Positions 46,301 through 55,600 of a stretch of 64,000 bases of DNA are shown here, piece by piece (position 1 is the first letter of the stretch; every line of letters starts with the position of its first letter). The notes beneath the pieces are model-generated. The model worked only from the letters and a program-made list of their open reading frames with translations. It was not told the DNA's origin and did not search any database. The stretch spans positions 9,858,001 through 9,922,000 of the forward strand of contig OU015569.1 in assembly GCA_907165135.1 (NCBI GenBank). The letters are read 5' to 3'. The position numbers were made by a program, and so were the translations under genes. Source of the stretch: Oikopleura dioica (Eukaryota > Animalia > Chordata).

Positions 46301-46937
46301 TGCGCCCGATTGCTAGCTCTCTCTTTCTTTCTACTCCAGGTCTAAAAGGCAGCGGTTAAAAGACGGTAACGGCGTTGGCCCCGCGCCAGCGTCTTTCAAA
46401 ACACAGTCAATCGTTGAAACATGGTGGGAATTGAACAAAAGAATCATTCTCTCGAAAAGGGGATGATGAGAAGGTATCTCGAATTCGGGATAGCAGAAAG
46501 CTTTCTTGGCAAATTATTAACGAGCTATTTATTATAATAACGCATAATAAAAATACCGTGTGCTAAGTGAGTAAAATCTGACCCTGGGGTAGATGGATAA
46601 AGCTCTTGAAAATAATAAAAACATTGAAACAGGGTCAATTGTAATTTGCTAACGTGATGAGTTTTCGTCAGTGCTAAAGGTCAGAAACTAATCCCGCAGC
46701 TGGATTCCCCATTTCGAACCTGACGATTTCGGAAGGCACTCGTTTTCTCTTTTTTGAACGGACAAAATCAAAATATCCTTAGTTTATTGTTTTAGCGGCA
46801 GGAACTTGGTCATGAGATGTAGCGTCTTGAGAGTCATCAAAACAGACTTTTTTGCAAATCTACGACGGGCACATTAAAAAACTCCCGTGGCAAGCACATG
46901 CACACGCGACGAGAAAAGTAGAAACAGAAAAGAAAAG

Positions 46938-49553
46938 TTAGAATTTGTTATCGCGACGGACTACTTTCGGAGAGTGATGTTGGGCACGGGAGCTTTTCTC
47001 CTGTCTTGGAGACTTTGATAGCGGCTAAATTGTTCTTTTAGACATTGTTGATTGAATTGCGCTTGGATTACCTGATTTTCTCTGGCTTCGAGACTGAATA
47101 AGGCTGCAGTTTTCGCTTCCAGGACTGAGACAGTCGTGCTTCCGTAACTCTCATCGGCCTGAATAAACTCTTACTCGAGCATTTCTTTATTTCTGATTAC
47201 GTCGGTCCAGTATCACCAAGAGGAACGACCTGGTCGCCGGAACTTTCTACATATGCTTTCTTGGAGACTTTTTCAACGTCTTTTTTATATCCTTCGAGAA
47301 ACTCTTCTGTCATCCGCAAGCTCCAGCGTTCTTTAGCGTCGGGTCGGAGCAATCCTCGCAGAAGAGAATCAAGACGAACATCGTAGATCGGTTTTGGAAG
47401 TTGGTAACAGAGTTTTTCCATCATCCCCAAATTGACATCAAAGTAGTTGATTCTTTCACCTCTTCGAGGCATCATTGGAAATTCCCCGAGTATCAGATAG
47501 TAAATGATTATTCCCACTTGCCAGGAATCAAGCATATCCGGCAGATAAGCTTCGCGTTTTAGTAATTGTGTGTCCCTTTAATCTTTATGATTCTCAATTA
47601 ATAACAAGAACCAGGTACCTAGACCATCCCCTGAGAACTTGGAGCATGTCTTCGCTGTCTGACATAAACTCATCTTCGTTGCGCATCGCAATAGAATATG
47701 GAGCAGACTTCAGTCGGACAGCAAGAGTAAAATCGCTTATTTTTACTTCATTTAGTGACCCATCTTTGAATTAATTTTAACACGAGGTAAAAATGATTTA
47801 GTCACCTATAAGTACGGAGTGGAGGTTTAGATTTCTATGGGAAATCTTTTGTTGATGGAGAAAAGTAACTGCTTTTGTAATCATAAGCATACATGGAAGC
47901 ATAGCTTTCTTTATTCGAAACGCAGAGTCTTTTCAGGAATCATTAAATGCGAAATAATGTGCGACTGTTTTAAACTATTCAAAAGTCATGTCAGCGAGAG
48001 AAAATTCAACAATCATCTCTTCATTTGGATACTCTGGAAGTTGAAGATTAAAGTCGTCCACGATACTTCGAGGGAGAAATCGTCCGCCAAGAAAATTTCT
48101 ACCTTTGAAATGTCGAATCGAAGGCTTTGGGGCTATTTTATTTAATAATCAACCTTTTTGAAAAAAATGTCCACCTGACAGAGAGATGAGAACTTGCGGA
48201 TTGATAGAATTTTCGTCGATCGGACCGAGATTCACATCCCAGCCAGATGGGGAGTCGACTGACAAGATAGGAGTGTCTGTCCAAGGAGTCTACATTATAT
48301 TCAACAACCAATTATTCGCGAAATATAAAGTCCCTTGCTCTGTTTTCGACAAATCGCTAATAATACGATCAAAAGGGGAACGAATTCCACCACTAGGATC
48401 AAAGCTGAATCCGAAAATAGAGTCCACAATTTGCGAATAGTTCTCGTACGCAGGAGGCTCATCTAGTACTCGAACTCCTGAACGGCTAGCAGCGTGAAAA
48501 AGATCTTGGTAGACTTGTTTCGCTGGTCTAATAAAAGAAAAATAAATGTCTTGGTTTGTCCAGAATATTGTACTGTTTAGGATATAGTAAGTCTGTTTGT
48601 CGTCCCATTTGAACCAAATGTCTAGCAGCAACTAGCCCGTCGCCACCGTTATTTCCAGGCCCAGCTTTCCGAGCTCACATATGGAAGAACCCGTGAATTT
48701 CACACCATCACAGTATGAAATTTACATGAACTCTGCCTATGACAAGAATACGTCCGGGAACGGATGTTCTCACAGCACATATGGCTACAGCCTCGCGACA
48801 CGTATCAACATAAAATATAGATCTATCCGATGACGCAATGAAATCAGCATGATGGACGCGCAAAGAGTTCAAAAAATGAACTTTTAAATTCTCATACTCG
48901 AAGGCTCACAATGTTGATACGCTAACTGACCAGCAAGCTCCATCAGAGCTTCCAGGGAAAATTTATATTCATTAAAGAGGCACTGATCAAGTTTATAGGC
49001 TGCCTCAGCTGTAATGGCTCTTATGAGTTTCCGGGAAGGATTCATTTAAGTCAGTCTGAAAGGGAAAAAAAGAAAATTAAGTGATTCCGATTCCTTTAGG
49101 GTCGTTGAGTCTTTTACAGGTAGATATCAAATTGTAGTATACATCAAGGGTCTTGTACTGTGAAATAGGGCCGAGTTTGTTGCGTGGTAGGTGGATGGCT
49201 TCCAAAACTACGATGAGCTCGTTCTCTTCTTTATAAACTTCGATTAGCCTTTGAAATCTGGAATCACCAAGTGAAAGTGCTATTAAATTAGTTCAACAGC
49301 ATATAGCTGGATTAAGGGGGTCCGAGTGGTTTCTTAAAAAAACTGAAGCACCTATGCCTACAAGCTCCTGCAGTATGGAGGCCTCATTGATAAGTGCCTG
49401 GTTGCCTTTAACCCTTGCATCGGACTTGCCGCTGGTTTTCACTTTTCTGGCTTCGAAGTTTTGATGAGACGTTATTGATCGAACAAAGCATGTCGAGATG
49501 GTAAAATTTTTGAAAACAAGCTCCGACAATTGATCGCTGAACTGATATGTCAT
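46938..49553 (-). CDS. CAMK-like pseudokinase whose second intron contains NAXE
   Basis: Exons 49553-49352 ([20 protein letters not shown]), 49279-49118 ([17 protein letters not shown]), 47928-47806 ([23 protein letters not shown]), 47763-47619 (VKISDFTLA), then [31 protein letters not shown]. Short introns are GT-AG and phase-compatible. Confidence 0.8.
47910..47915 (-). terminator. AATAAA, first poly(A) signal downstream of the NAXE stop; lies inside pseudokinase exon 3
   Basis: No AATAAA in the 46 nt between the NAXE stop (47975) and the kinase acceptor (47929); the first one is at 47915-47910. Confidence 0.45.
47975..49045 (-). CDS. NAXE: NAD(P)H-hydrate epimerase (YjeF_N, AIBP)
   Basis: [86 protein letters not shown]. 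No obvious mitochondrial presequence; exon 2 boundary not resolved. Confidence 0.95.
49056..49077 (-). promoter_or_regulatory. strong 3' acceptor (polypyrimidine tract + CAG) 10 nt upstream of the NAXE ATG; candidate SL trans-splice site
   Basis: TTTTCTTTTTTTCCCTTTCAG|ACTGACTTAAATG on the minus strand. Confidence 0.5.
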
Positions 49554-49673
49554 CTAAAAAAGGCATTTCAAAAAAGAGTCCATATGAATGTAGCAATGAA
49601 TTGTTATCTGTGTTAAAGTAATGAAAAAGAAGAAAATGAATAATGAGACATAAGTTGGACAATAATGAAGATT

Positions 49674-52600
49674 TCAGCGAAGTCGATCCCAGGAAAGCCC
49701 CTTTTTTACTTTCACGTCGAACCTTACTGGAAACTTGCCTTCTAGAGGAAGCATGTTGCAAAGTATCTCTACAATAAACTTTGCAAAACAAAAGATCAAA
49801 TTGAAGTCGATACCTTCTAACACATCCTTATCTTTCTCCTCAACTTCGAACAAAAGCTCATCGTGAATTTGCAACACAAGCTTGGCATCTATACCAGTTT
49901 CTCTTATCTTTCTTGCGGCTTTGACTGTTCCCATTTTGACAATATCGGCAGCTGATCCTTGAATTTTCGTATTCACCGCTAAATTAAATGTAGAATCTTG
50001 CTTTTGAGAGATTTGCTCTTTTACCGACTCGAGCTGCGCGGGAAGAATAGTTTTCGAACGAACGCCTGCGCCCAATCAATGTTTCAGTGTAGAGATTGCT
50101 CTCTGCGTTTTTGTTGACTTGTTCGAGAAAAGCATGCATTACAGGATAGGAACCAAGGAACTCTGATGATAATTTCTCAGCTTCTTCAACGGTGACGCCA
50201 AGTTGTTGACTAAAGAGGAAATTTAGCACGCGTGGCGATGGACTCACTTACCCCAAAGTTTTATTCCCCATTCCATAAATGATGCCGTACACAAGAGCCT
50301 TCACTTGAGTTCGTTGCTCAACTGATATCCTCTCTCTCTTCAACCATTTTCTTCCTATGCTAACAAAGGGATCCTCGTGATCAACGAAGGATGTGCGTAG
50401 TCCTTCGTCTCCGGAAAGCAGTGCCAAGACGCGCAATTCCAGCTGAAGAAAAATAAATTATCATTTTGATTGATAATTCAATCTCATGATACCTGTCTAT
50501 AATCTACTGAGATGAAAATGTAGTTTGGGTTTGTTCTGAAACAGTTTCGAACTTTGATGACCTTCCCACAGCATTCGAATTCGTTTTGGACCATCTGCAA
50601 CGAAGGATTGTCCATTGAGATACGACCAGTTCGATTAATTAGCACGGGAGTAGAATAAATACGGTTATCTTTGCTCGCATTTTTATACGACAAGAGATCA
50701 GAAAATGCTTTTGTCGCTTTGCGGAATTGAATGAGCGGTTTTATACGAGGTTCATCTTCCACCAACACTTCCAGGACTTCCTTACTCACAGAATTAGACA
50801 ACTTTCCTTCTACAGGTTCGCATTTCAAGAAATCGTAGACGTATTGCCGCTGATCTGGAAGATGTTTGAAATTCAGAGAATCCCGTTGCTTTCCTTTTGG
50901 CGCTTCTTTTTTCATTTTATTCGCAAGTCGATCAATTAATGTTGTCAAAGACTTGATCGTTTTCTCTGAAGCAGATTCGGAAAATGGCATTCCATTCTCT
51001 GACATCTGATATATAACTTCGGCGTGCTCCATTTCTATGTTAAATCTTTCAAGAAGATTCCGGTCCTCTAGAAGTTTTTGACTCCGAGATACGATCGTCG
51101 AAGAGCAGAAACAATCAAACCGGGCTCCCCATTGTCGAAGGTGGTTCTTTCCTTCTTCCGAATGTAACCCTTCGACAAAGCATATTCCTTTAGAGTTATA
51201 GGTTCGTCTCCTTTCCCTATCGCCGCTGAAGAGTCTTCAAAGCAAATGGCCTGACGGACATCGAAGAATCTCTTGGTTGGTAATTGTATTATGTTCATTT
51301 GTTTGAGCGCCCTCTTTACTTCAATGAAATTCCAACAAACAATTAGCTTTGCAGCAACAAGAATATTTGATATTGACACTGAATCCAGATTCAACTCATA
51401 CACAAGTCCTGTTGTCGATTCTGGCGTACAGAGATAGAGCTTATTGGCGATAACTTTTATTGCAATGCTCTTATGCTTAGAAATATACTTTCCAAGACGT
51501 ACTGCATCTTCTTCTAATGATGTTGGGCGCAAGCGGGTTAGGGGTTGCTTGGGTTTATTGGTTGTAGTTTGTGTCTCATCTTCATCATCAGATGCTGGTG
51601 GCTAAAAATGAGATCTAACTTGAGTTAGTTAAAAAAATAGCACCTTGGGGGTAATAGGCCATTTCTTTATGAAGCTTGGAGTATCAGTCGGCTCCTCAAA
51701 AAGACGTGTCCTTTTGGGCGTTCTTGGCAGATTGACATTAGTAAGGCCATTTTTATTTCTCGGTGAAAGATTTGTGAGTACAGTGTCCATTCGAATGAGA
51801 GACTTTTGAGGTGTGATCGATTTTTTACTTTTTGATTTTGAATCTGGCGTTGTCGGTAAGACTTGATTCTTATTCTTAGATATTGGCGAGTTTCTTTTGA
51901 TTGCACTTTCATTGGTTTCTGTAATTGGTTCCGTTCTTTCTACTTTGGACTTTGAAGAATGTGGGTTTTCTGTTGGAGGTGACTTTGATTCATTTTTATT
52001 TCCCATAACACTGGTGAAAGCTTCTGACGGAAGTGATTCGCTAAATGTTTCTTCTGAACTTTTTTGATTATCTTTAACTGGGCTTGACTTTGCTATATGT
52101 GTAGAGCTTTCATCTGCTTTTTCGGGAATATGAAATGTTTTAAGTTCTTCGAAGGCGATAGATTCGTCAAAAATTTCTTCTTTTGCAGGAGAACTGGCCT
52201 CTTTTTGGGCAACAGACTCAATCGGAGCTTCTTTTTCCGAACTCTTTATTTCAGTTGATAAACTTGCGTCTTTTTTCCTTCCTACTGGAGATGAACCGGT
52301 TACCATTGGTTCTAGGTCAAGGGTGTCAACAGTAAGTGGCTCGGCAAAGGTCTCATCGCTGTCTGGTGATGATTTCTCAGGGTCTACTGTAGTTTTAATC
52401 AATTGCTTCCCTTCTTCAGCTTTTTTCTCTTCGGGGTCTGGGTTTTGATCGATTTCGGTGATAATAGTTGCTACTTGAGAGTCAATTTGATCCGGAGGTT
52501 TTGTACATGTGTCCCAGACTGAGCTCTTCATAAACTCAGCAATACTTTCATCAACACTGGTGGATGACTCCTGGGATGCACTTGGACTCCTCTTCCCATC

Positions 52601-55600
52601 TTTCACGTTCAAATCAGCATTATCCAAAGATTCTTCGAACGTCGGCTCAACTTCGTGCTCTTCGACAGGCTTATGATCAATTCTCATCTTTTTCGATGTG
52701 GATGGTTCACTGTCAGGGCAGTGTGAATCGAAATCTGCTGATTCTTGACATTCGTCTTCAAACAATGTTTCAGAATGTTGTTCAGAATCGCCACCCGATG
52801 ATCGACGCCTCTTCAAGCGAATGCTTGAAAAAGTACTGATTTCAGTTTGGTCGGATTCTGGACTTTCTCGTCTTTCTTGCTCTGTCTTCTTTTCAACTGG
52901 GAATAGCTCTTGAGACTCATCTTCTTCTGAAGTCATCCCTGCATCTGGTAGAGGTGAATGATCTGATCTCGGCGAGGCGTTGAAGTAAGCAGCAAGAGAA
53001 TCGTTTAGACTTTCCATCATTGAGGCATCATTCGGATCGGGCATGAATTGAGAACTTGCGTGATTGTCGATCTCGGGCAGGTGGCTTTGCGTTTTCGGGC
53101 CTGGTTCATCGATCAAGGACCTCGAATCAGAAAAGGCAGCTTCGATGACAGTATCTGTTTTCGATGTTTCAGTTTTCTTGCTAATAGGTGATAACGTAGC
53201 TTCGCATACAATTGATTTAGCTGTTCCGTCAAGTTTTGTCATATTGTCGAAAGTATTTTGACTGAGAATATGCGAGTCTTCTTCACTTTCTGGCTCGTCC
53301 AAAATAGTTTCAGTCCCGATAATCGAGAAGCTTTCTCTTTTGACCATTTCCGCTGCTTCTTGAAATGGCATAGGCATATTTATTCCTTGAAGAACAACCA
53401 TTCCACGGCTCTCTATGATTTCATTCGAAAGCTCATTTTCGCCTGTTTGAGGCTTAGAGGAGATGAATCGTTCCATTTGTTTGAAGGCTTCTACTATCTC
53501 GGAAGTGTCAGCTTTGACAATATGCTTCAGTCGTTTGAATCCGAGCTTGTAAAACTGGCGCGCTCGTCGGGCAGATATGAATGGGCATCTCACAAGATCA
53601 AGCAGTTCTCTATGAACGCCAGCTTCAATTTGATTCTGAAATGTCGCCAGAAGATTTCGTAAGTGGTGCCATCCGAGCTTTTCGCAGAATATAGTAATCA
53701 TTCCAGCATATTGCGATGCAGAGATTTGGAGCGACTGGAGCGTTCCTCGAGGTACTTGATATCTTTCAGACACAATTTCGATCGGGATCTCGTTGATAAG
53801 GTCGAAGATTCCAAGCGCTCTATAGAATCGCGAGACGATTTGAAGTTTTCTGTATCCTAATTTATCCATTTTTCGAGGCATTCCATGTCTAGCAATTTTT
53901 CGCACAAGGCCAATGTCAACTTGGCATTTACTCGCTACATCGAGTGCAGTAGAATCCAAGTTGTCAAATAATTTGCTTACAGTTGCAAAGTTGAGGCTAG
54001 TTTCTTGGATTGGTGTGCACAAGTAAACTAGATGAAGATCAGTCGTAAGATTCAAAGACCTTGCAGCTGAAGATAAATCGTCAAATACGGATAGAGCTGT
54101 CATCGGAGGCATTCCAGCACCTACAGCTGCTTCTCCAAGCTTTGTTATCTCAATTTCCGATTCTCCGACTATGGTGATGAATTCATTCTCCTTCAGCCAG
54201 CCGTAAGTATCTTTGAGCAGCTTATCTTTTCCGGAAAGGTCTTCAAGTTGATGATTGTATAATGTTGAAGATATGAAATCTTCTATTTCTTTTACCGTAA
54301 CTGTCGTTTTGTCAGTGGTTGCTATCTGCTCCAAGATCGCTCTTTGAATCTGTGTTCGATCGAGTTGAGAGAGAATCATTTCAGCCTTATTTGCAATGAG
54401 TTGTCTGGCATCTTTTTGTGCGCTTGGCGAATTGGGACACATAAGAACTGCGTGACCTGCCTCATCAATTCCTTTTCTTCCTGCTCTCCCGCACATCTGC
54501 TGAAAAACACGCGCTTTGATCAACTGTTTTTGGAAGCCATAGGGACTTCTGATAATAACCATTCGAGCGGGCAGATTGACACCGGCTGAGAGCGTAGTTG
54601 TCGCCATTAGAATTCTCACGACGCCAGCTCGGAAGCCCTCTTCGACAACAGACCTTTCTTCAGTTGTCAATCCAGCATGATGGAAACAGATTCCCGCTTT
54701 CACATTTGAATACATACTGCTGTCGGGCCAAATCCGCGCTTCAATCAGAACTTCCCGAAACTCTTCGAATTTATCCGAATGAAATACGTCCGAACGCTTG
54801 GGAATGAGGGCAGTATGCTCAACAAGAGTCTTCACCATCTTTTCGCACCAATCTTTTGTCGGACAAAAAACCATGGCTTGATGACCTTGCAGAATTGTTT
54901 TCAGCAGAAGAGAAAGTATCGCCTTCTGCTCTTGATCCCTAGGCGGTGCCTGTCCCAAGTCGATAGGAAGATCGACTGAGGATAACCGTTTGAGCCTCGC
55001 GCCAGACACCTCCCAAAGTTGACTTTTGTAGCAAAGATTCACTTCGAGAGGAATTGGACGGAAACTCGTCTCGTACTCGACGGCTCTCAGCCATCGCGCG
55101 ATCTGACTGAGATTAGGAATCGTCGCAGACATACCAACAATTTGAACATTTCCCCAAGTCAAAGCTTTTGTGCAGACAAGTTCAAGAATAAAGCCTCTCC
55201 CGCTTTCCCCAAGTAAGTGAATTTCATCTAGGAAGATTGCGCCAAGGGAATCGATCATCTCATTCAGCTTCAAATAGTTGATAATAGAATTGGCCTTTTC
55301 AATTGTGCACACGAGGATGTCATTTTTTCTATGCCGCCCGTCGGGTTATTACCTCCAGCGAAGAGGCCAATGCGTATTTTTGAGTCTTGAAAAATCTCAC
55401 GGAATGAAAAGTACTTTTCTCTTGCTATCGCGACGAAAGGAAAGACAACAATAACCTTCTTCCTCTCCGCGGTTCTCCGTGCGATAAGTATTTCGGATAC
55501 AAGTGTTTTACCAGAAGAAGTCGGCCCGGAGTAGATGAGATTGCGGCTTCCATTGAGGACTCCCTCGAGACTGAGTACTTCGTTTTGCCATTCGAACAAA

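What the first reader, a model, noticed from the sequence alone, without database searches (positions are those of the whole stretch)
46938..49553. A whole NAXE gene nested on the same strand inside a kinase gene, splitting N-lobe from C-lobe
Seen: kinase subdomains I-V lie at 49553-49118 and subdomains VIa-XI at 47928-46938. Complete NAXE (49045-47975) sits between them on the same strand. A GT donor at 49117 (ACC T|GTAAAA) joins the AG acceptor at 47929 in frame, giving a 1189-nt intron. The same donor spliced to NAXE's own strong acceptor (49056) gives TAC-TGA, ending an N-lobe-only peptide 5 nt before the NAXE ATG. NAXE's first AATAAA lies inside kinase exon 3. Known: most nested genes are antisense to their host. 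Inference: one operon transcript may be resolved into mutually exclusive products (kinase versus SL-trans-spliced NAXE) by competition between cis-splicing, trans-splicing and polyadenylation.
Basis: partly seen in the sequence, partly recalled or inferred. Interest (0 to 1): 0.85.

Follow-up and report, generated by a model that had tools for sequence, protein, structure and literature searches.

The report
Nested NAXE with circular-exon splicing switch
In the larvacean Oikopleura dioica a whole NAD(P)H-repair gene (NAXE) sits on the same strand inside an intron of a pseudokinase gene; both messenger RNAs are made, the exon just upstream is also found as a small circular RNA, and a short RNA pairing switch probably decides which product is made.

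Summary
The window is O. dioica Okinawa. POLQ > kinase N-lobe > NAXE > kinase C-lobe is conserved in Bergen-type genomes. Two metatranscriptome contigs give a full spliced kinase mRNA (393 aa) that skips NAXE; one carries the SL leader and poly(A). Splicing uses a GA donor (49093), not GT 49117: the intron is GA..AG, 1165 nt. Another contig shows SL trans-splicing at NAXE's acceptor. No N-lobe-only junction was seen. The kinase looks catalytically dead (HRN, DFT).

New: kinase exon 2 is back-spliced into a 164-nt circle (49257-49094) in two independent RNA sets, and its synonymous sites are nearly frozen (6/58 vs 125/261, p 4e-8). A heptamer just after the donor (GGAATCA) can pair with an identical TGATTCC before either the circle acceptor (15-bp stem) or the exon-3 acceptor. 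This suggests a Dscam-like choice: loop out NAXE (kinase) or loop exon 2 (circle, NAXE freed for SL). The switch is inferred: no covariation, few reads, no RNase R test, and an internal NAXE promoter is not excluded. This scan earlier noted same-strand nested genes with intron-closing stems (TOR, NSUN2), but no circle.

The parts
49674..55312 (-). 3' part of DNA polymerase theta gene (upstream neighbour; stop 120 nt before the kinase SL acceptor)
49554..49555 (-). Kinase SL trans-splice acceptor, directly before the ATG
   Evidence: L008: 40-nt SL joined to ATG
49358..49553 (-). Kinase exon 1 (N-lobe: beta3 A-R-K, alphaC Glu; no GxGxxG)
49268..49357 (-). Kinase intron 1, 90 nt, GC..TG; internal conserved GT (49351) and AG (49280) are not used in the reads seen
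   Evidence: (9+3 reads), L007/L008
49094..49267 (-). Kinase exon 2, hyperconserved (0/58 aa and 6/58 synonymous differences)
49253..49267 (-). Arm A (GTGATTCCAGATTTC), spanning the back-splice acceptor AG 49259-49258; selector heptamer 49266-49260
   Evidence: predicted pairing
49094..49257 (-). 164-nt circular RNA (back-splice of donor 49094 to acceptor 49257)
   Evidence: X4 5 reads / 4 starts; X1 closed 194-nt contig, depth 7, no differences to the window
49081..49094 (-). Arm B (GGAATCGGAATCAC) over the GA donor at 49093; docking heptamer 49088-49082
47929..49093 (-). Kinase intron 2, GA..AG, 1165 nt, containing all of NAXE
   Evidence: (4 reads); public model P0121 uses the same joint
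49056..49057 (-). NAXE SL trans-splice acceptor, 38 nt after the GA donor
   Evidence: L016 SL junction
47975..49045 (-). NAXE coding region, 6 exons (about 49045-48923, 48791-48737, 48664-48574, 48527-~48340, ~48276-48175, 48132-47975), about 238 aa
   Evidence: joints; intron 1 and 4 boundaries uncertain
47936..47943 (-). Arm C (ATGATTCC), second selector heptamer 47942-47936, 7 nt before the exon-3 acceptor
   Evidence: kept in four haplotype groups in an otherwise scrambled intron tail
47806..47928 (-). Kinase exon 3 (alphaE, catalytic loop HRNLNLHS)
46961..47763 (-). Kinase exons 4-7 (47763-47619, 47575-47201, 47158-47072, 47024-46961); DFT, DSWQVG, subdomain XI Arg
46783..46788 (-). Kinase AATAAA; poly(A) added about 46770 in L008 and L013

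Best explanation
An SL-processed, operon-like transcript (POLQ > kinase[NAXE] > next gene) is resolved molecule by molecule into either a pseudokinase mRNA or a NAXE mRNA. SHOWN: (a) SL-kinase mRNA spliced across NAXE from the GA donor; (b) SL-NAXE RNA starting 34-38 nt after that donor; (c) a back-splice junction that closes exon 2 into a 164-nt circle. INFERRED: the docking heptamer GGAATCA (+6..+12 of the intron) pairs either with TGATTCC before the exon-3 acceptor, which loops NAXE out and brings donor and acceptor together (kinase), or with TGATTCC before the circle acceptor, which takes the donor away or back-splices it and leaves NAXE's acceptor free for SL trans-splicing (NAXE plus circle). 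The donor is probably too close to NAXE's acceptor for cis-splicing. The circle is then the kept remnant of the NAXE outron, and may have a function of its own, since its whole length is constrained.
For: Joined kinase. SL-NAXE. Circle in two unrelated libraries and two lineages, ending exactly at an AG acceptor and at the donor used by the kinase; not listed in the oligo-dT run. A-B stem of 15 bp, -17.7 to -21 kcal/mol; 0.33% of random 30x30-nt window pairs do as well, other exons of the locus give -4.5 to -13.5; pair probability 0.6-1.0 in short local folds of all five genomic copies. Identical heptamer before both competing acceptors and absent before NAXE's; TGATTCC precedes only 10 of 4055 AG sites; arm C kept in four haplotype groups. 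Exon 2 synonymous freeze p 4e-8. Order kept over about 25 My although operons are usually scrambled (PMC11067885).
Against: Arms A and B are invariant and arm C's core too, so there is no covariation. B-C is weak (-9 to -11 kcal/mol; 4-13% of random AG-ending 32-mers match it). A-B probability falls to near 0 in some longer folding contexts. The stems do not explain constraint in the middle of exon 2. Read numbers are small. No single molecule links circle formation to NAXE trans-splicing. No TSS data, so an internal promoter is open. Circle reads in X4 are mostly antisense-oriented with TSO ends.
Confidence: 0.5

Rival explanations
1. NAXE is an independent nested unit whose promoter or enhancer lies in kinase exon 2. 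DNA-level constraint explains the freeze. The kinase is spliced across it separately, and the circle is a by-product.
For: Constraint covers the whole 200 nt directly upstream of NAXE, beyond the pairing arms. SL trans-splicing also occurs on monocistronic O. dioica genes (own knowledge), so L016 does not prove an operon origin.
Against: The conserved block ends within about 25 nt of the circle and arm limits (49284-49070). It does not explain exact complementarity across both splice sites or conserved arm C. A start site inside exon 2 cannot produce the circle.
Confidence: 0.2
2. Passive alternative operon: the outcome is set by kinetic competition between SL trans-splicing or 3' cleavage and cis-splicing. 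B-C is at most a general intron-shortening stem, and the circle is a stable waste product without regulatory role.
For: All longer introns of the locus have end-to-end duplexes (-8 to -17 kcal/mol) while most 42-47-nt introns do not. Earlier scan notes report such stems at other nested genes (unchecked).
Against: A waste circle would not need nearly frozen synonymous sites or an invariant 15-bp clamp over about 25 My.
Confidence: 0.2
3. The nesting is real but the circle is not: the junction comes from reverse-transcriptase template switching at the stem, or from linear exon repetition by trans-splicing between two pre-mRNAs.
For: Only 5 reads plus one contig. The ends lie close together in the A-B stem. 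X4 reads are largely antisense with TSO loose ends. X4 depth is biased toward conserved sequence.
Against: Same nucleotide-exact junction at splice signals in two library types and lineages, only 2 nt of microhomology. In X1 the closed circle is the only piece of the 3.8-kb stretch. Not listed in oligo-dT RNA, where a repeated-exon mRNA should appear. All genomic copies hold one exon 2.
Confidence: 0.09
4. Two half-kinase remnants around NAXE, or a misassembly.
For: Public annotations call the C-lobe alone or fuse pieces to POLQ.
Against: Full-length SL-to-poly(A) mRNA contig, 87% amino-acid identity across lineages with no stops, same arrangement in independent assemblies.
Confidence: 0.01

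Closest known systems
Same-strand (parallel) nested genes in animals
   Same: A complete gene inside one intron of another on the same strand; a selected-against but known class (75 nested parallel pairs in human, PMC2330155).
   Different: Here the nested gene is released by SL trans-splicing 34-38 nt from the host donor, and the host exon upstream is circularised.
C. elegans 'alternative' operons (own knowledge; the papers were not held)
   Same: One pre-mRNA processed either by cis-splicing as one gene or by internal trans-splicing as an operon.
   Different: As recalled, those split one gene or fuse neighbours. Here an unrelated full gene interrupts one protein domain, in a chordate with a single SL, and a circle is produced.
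Competing RNA pairings: Dscam1 docking site/selector and PGRP-LC (PMC8791459, PMC6191721)
   Same: One docking sequence with mutually exclusive partners that choose the 3' splice site and can mask a 5' splice site.
   Different: The predicted choice here is between forward cis-splicing and back-splicing/trans-splicing, so between two different genes. The core is only 7 nt and untested.
Exonic circRNAs promoted by flanking reverse-complementary matches (own knowledge)
   Same: Back-splice of one exon clamped by complementary flanks.
   Different: The clamp is 15 bp, repeat-free and lies on the splice sites. The donor is GA and the acceptor is not the one used in the linear mRNA. No paper on Oikopleura circRNA was found.
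GA-AG introns of O. dioica (PMC7072748)
   Same: AG|GAA donor consensus matches AAAG|GAATC.
   Different: 1165 nt against a median intron of 49 nt (PMC8008620), and it holds a gene.

Membership tests
Same-strand nested gene | Host exons on both sides are spliced together in mature RNA | tested here: met
Same-strand nested gene | Inner gene lies wholly within one host intron and is itself transcribed and spliced | tested here: met
   CDS 49045-47975 within 49093-47929. Its 3' UTR can run into host exon 3 (L009, L013, L016; contigs, not single molecules)
Alternative operon (cis versus trans processing of one pre-mRNA) | Internal acceptor is SL trans-spliced | tested here: met
   L016, (one contig)
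Alternative operon (cis versus trans processing of one pre-mRNA) | Both products come from the same promoter | not testable with these tools
   needs CAGE or nascent long reads
Exonic circRNA | Back-splice junction at splice signals, single genomic copy | tested here: met
Exonic circRNA | Covalently closed (RNase R resistant, non-polyadenylated) | tested here: inconclusive
   not listed in the oligo-dT run, closed contig in the random-primed run; no RNase R data
Docking-site/selector competing pairing | One site complementary to two mutually exclusive conserved partners | tested here: met
Docking-site/selector competing pairing | Compensatory covariation or mutational rescue | tested here: inconclusive
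   arms invariant in all sequences held; no experiment
Active eukaryotic protein kinase | Kinase domain with N- and C-lobe | tested here: met
   Pfam Pkinase 38-300, E 5.5e-17; aligns with CDPK 3hko over 52-297
Active eukaryotic protein kinase | Catalytic HRD-K-N loop, DFG, Gly-rich loop | tested here: not met
   [11 protein letters not shown], no GxGxxG; beta3 Lys and alphaC Glu kept: predicted pseudokinase
NAXE/AIBP (YjeF_N) | YjeF_N domain with [10 protein letters not shown]-x-x-FGFSF and S-x-D-x-PSGW motifs, best match AIBP | tested here: met
NAXE/AIBP (YjeF_N) | In-frame fully spliced mRNA | tested here: inconclusive
   only an out-of-frame intron-1 joint (4 reads) and intron-retaining contigs were seen

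The most novel reading that the evidence does not exclude
A two-gene RNA switch: a 7-nt docking site next to a GA donor chooses between cis-splicing across a nested gene and back-splicing of the host exon. Circularisation frees the nested gene for SL trans-splicing and yields a conserved, functional 164-nt circular RNA. Intron-closing stems may be the general way O. dioica splices across same-strand nested genes.
Probability: 0.35. Interest if true: 0.88.

Novelty: new variant of a known kind. Interest (0 to 1): 0.74.

Why it matters
It shows cis-, trans- and back-splicing competing for one donor-acceptor pair within 200 nt, with the outcome deciding which of two unrelated proteins is made. 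If the pairing model holds, it answers how an SL-using, short-intron genome avoids trans-splicing at the acceptor of a gene that lies inside a host intron, and gives a circRNA a defined role. The locus is small (2.6 kb) and the arms are 7-15 nt, so it is directly testable with minigenes. The papers searched report no circRNA and no such locus in Oikopleura, and the public annotations miss the gene structure.

Tried and rejected
Misassembly or tandem duplication of exon 2: single copy in all genomic copies. Overlapping reading frame as cause of the freeze: all other frames have 2-9 stops. Rolling-circle translation: stops in every frame, no useful ATG. Structured circle interior: folds worse than shuffles (-12.8 vs -18.8); whole-region fold z about 0. 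Known ncRNA: only chance-level Rfam hits. BHB/tRNA-endonuclease circle: the cuts are 4 bp apart but polarity and bulges do not fit (own knowledge). Orthologues in other appendicularians: none found, so deeper synteny is untested. NAXE homologue search was blank (not informative). Single-sequence structure prediction failed (pLDDT 34). Bacterial promoter scan is irrelevant. X8 proved to be DNA. Arm B also pairs with the SL leader (-15.7 kcal/mol, 1.8% of random 24-mers), but a stretch upstream of the kinase acceptor gives -13.4, so this is only a lead. As the operators asked, my own spliced models and the back-splice junction were not sent to any search tool; exons were searched apart by reference, and joined models were built only inside scripts to check frame and count substitutions. 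The joined proteins searched (P0121 part, P0159) are database entries given by reference.

Full report
Source and anatomy. The long upstream ORF is identical to O. dioica OKI2018_I69 XSR g16204, so the window is the Okinawa genome. On the minus strand, POLQ ends at 49674, the kinase starts at 49553, NAXE occupies 49045-47975 and kinase C-lobe exons follow from 47928 to the stop at 46961. Searched exon by exon, NAXE pieces match YjeF_N and mouse AIBP and the C-lobe pieces match Pkinase. The public annotations do not describe the locus correctly: Okinawa models fuse pieces to POLQ or give the C-lobe alone, and Bergen calls NAXE and the C-lobe as separate genes.

The arrangement is not an assembly error. 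The same order is in GCA_977009715.1 (L001), Bergen OdB3 (L002), metagenome contigs L004 and L005, and the DNA contigs of run X8. Okinawa split from the other lineages about 25 Mya, and operons are usually scrambled between them (PMC11067885).

In bulk oligo-dT run X5 (Bergen type) 4 reads join 49094 to the start of exon 3 (table 5c). Two independent metatranscriptome contigs encode a 393-aa protein (P0159); L008 reads template-switch oligo, 40-nt SL leader, ATG, all seven exons, AATAAA and poly(A). The donor is AAAG|GAATC, so the intron is GA..AG, 49093-47929, 1165 nt. GA-AG introns with this consensus are known in O. dioica (PMC7072748). Intron 1 is spliced GC..TG (49357-49268) in X5, X4, L007 and L008, although conserved in-frame GT and AG sites lie inside it. 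With these joints the Okinawa frame is open for 387 aa and 87% identical to P0159. The protein is a whole kinase domain (E 5.5e-17) that keeps the beta3 lysine and alphaC glutamate but has HRNLNLHS for HRDLKPEN, DFT for DFG and no glycine-rich loop: a predicted pseudokinase with only distant relatives outside O. dioica.

NAXE is released by trans-splicing. RNA contig L016 has the SL leader joined at the acceptor equivalent to 49056. It retains NAXE introns 1, 2 and 4 and runs through the 3' UTR into spliced kinase exons 3-4; L009, L010 and L013 also join the NAXE 3' UTR to spliced C-lobe exons. These are contigs, so a NAXE mRNA that uses the C-lobe as 3' UTR is possible but not shown. No joint from the kinase donor to NAXE's acceptor was listed; it would need a 38- or 34-nt intron, shorter than the 42-47-nt introns of the locus.

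The unexpected product is a circle. The read lay shows a joint that goes back 164 nt, from 49094 to 49257 on the coding strand. It has 5 reads from 4 starts in single-cell run X4 (Bergen type). In the wild metatranscriptome X1 it is a 194-nt contig with a 30-nt terminal overlap, depth 7, identical to the Okinawa window, and the only piece laid on 3.8 kb. It is not listed in the oligo-dT run. The ends are the kinase's GA donor and a CCAG acceptor 10 nt inside exon 2. Caveats: counts are small; most X4 reads there are antisense-oriented with TSO ends at a CCC, which fits TSO priming on the coding-strand RNA but means the strand rests on the splice signals; X4 depth favours conserved sequence. 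I put the circle at about 80% real.

Exon 2 is under RNA- or DNA-level constraint. Against the L007 mRNA it has 0 of 58 amino-acid and 6 of 58 synonymous differences, versus 125 of 261 synonymous differences in the other exons (p 4e-8). A 60-nt perfect run crosses the donor into the intron (49129-49070). No overlapping frame, Rfam family or internal structure explains this.

Pairing arms. Arm A (49267-49253) and arm B (49094-49081) form a 15-bp stem with one bulged A that spans both back-splice sites. It scores -21 kcal/mol in 30x30-nt windows, which 0.33% of random pairs reach; other exons give -4.5 to -13.5. Its probability is 0.6-1.0 in short folds but drops in some longer contexts. Earlier scan notes on stems closing the TOR and NSUN2 introns around nested genes (unchecked) led me to test the intron's far end. 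There TGATTCC (47942-47936) lies 7 nt before the exon-3 acceptor, is kept in four haplotype groups in an otherwise scrambled tail, and pairs with the same GGAATCA of arm B at -9 to -11 kcal/mol, leaving donor and acceptor exposed. The heptamer is identical to the core of arm A and precedes only 10 of 4055 AG sites, but the duplex energy alone is unremarkable (4-13% of random sites).

Mechanism. Shown: three products (kinase mRNA, SL-NAXE RNA, back-splice junction). Inferred: B-C loops NAXE out and gives the kinase; B-A withdraws or back-splices the donor, leaving NAXE's acceptor for the SL and the circle as the kept outron remnant. Confidence 0.5. Rivals: an internal NAXE promoter in exon 2 (0.2), passive kinetic competition with incidental stems (0.2), circle artefact (0.09), half-genes or misassembly (0.01).

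Comparison and verdict. Same-strand nesting (PMC2330155), alternative operons (own knowledge), competing pairings (PMC8791459, PMC6191721) and clamped circRNAs are each known. I found no paper on this locus, on Oikopleura circRNA, or on back-splicing coupled to SL release of a nested gene; the library lacks most subscription journals. It is a new variant of known kinds, with a 35% chance of being a new type of two-gene switch. My own joined models and the back-splice junction were not sent to search tools; that joined step was left out. Interest 0.74.

Noticed in passing
window 48926-48792 (-), NAXE intron 1: The only joint seen (4 reads, GT..AG) is out of frame and stops at codon 42; the in-frame GC donor lies 4 nt downstream inside a 12-bp stem that joins the intron ends. 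Introns 1, 2 and 4 are retained in RNA contigs. NAXE output may be limited by unproductive or delayed splicing.
   Followed up: partly
window ~48340-48276 (-), NAXE intron 4: Spliced in 13-14 reads, yet no canonical donor/acceptor pair gives the frame in any lineage (AG..AG, GA..CA or GC..GA in Okinawa; GA..TG or GC..GG in Bergen).
   Followed up: partly
window 49357-49268 (-), kinase intron 1: GC..TG intron used in four data sets, while conserved in-frame GT (49351) and AG (49280) sites inside it are complementary to each other (7 bp) and unused.
   Followed up: partly
window 49357-47025 (-), all introns of both genes: Introns over about 55 nt have end-to-end duplexes of -8 to -17 kcal/mol; five of six introns of 40-47 nt have almost none. 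Possibly a general way to shorten long introns in this genome.
   Followed up: partly
window 46837-46784 (-), kinase 3' UTR: Conserved 17-codon ORF (MTLKT..LMTKFLPLKQ) with Leu/Pro synonymous changes across four haplotype groups; its stop overlaps the kinase AATAAA.
   Followed up: partly
window 46700-46600: About 95% conserved non-coding block after the kinase poly(A) site (47-nt perfect run); no Rfam match; C-box- and D-box-like words on the + strand.
   Followed up: partly
window 49094-49081 (-): Arm B is also complementary to the SL leader (-15.7 kcal/mol; 1.8% of random 24-mers); could help recruit the SL RNA to NAXE's acceptor, but post hoc.
   Followed up: partly
window ~46300-44440 (-); L009:2019-3479: Downstream gene of 486 aa with no Pfam match, contiguous with spliced kinase exons in RNA contigs L009 and L011 (read-through or operon).
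   Followed up: partly
window 46598-46460: About 110-nt AT-rich insertion in Okinawa relative to Bergen-type copies, directly after the conserved block.
   Followed up: no
L002, NAXE exon 3: The Bergen OdB3 assembly has one extra A that shifts the frame and explains its truncated 173-aa NAXE model; probably a homopolymer error.
   Followed up: partly
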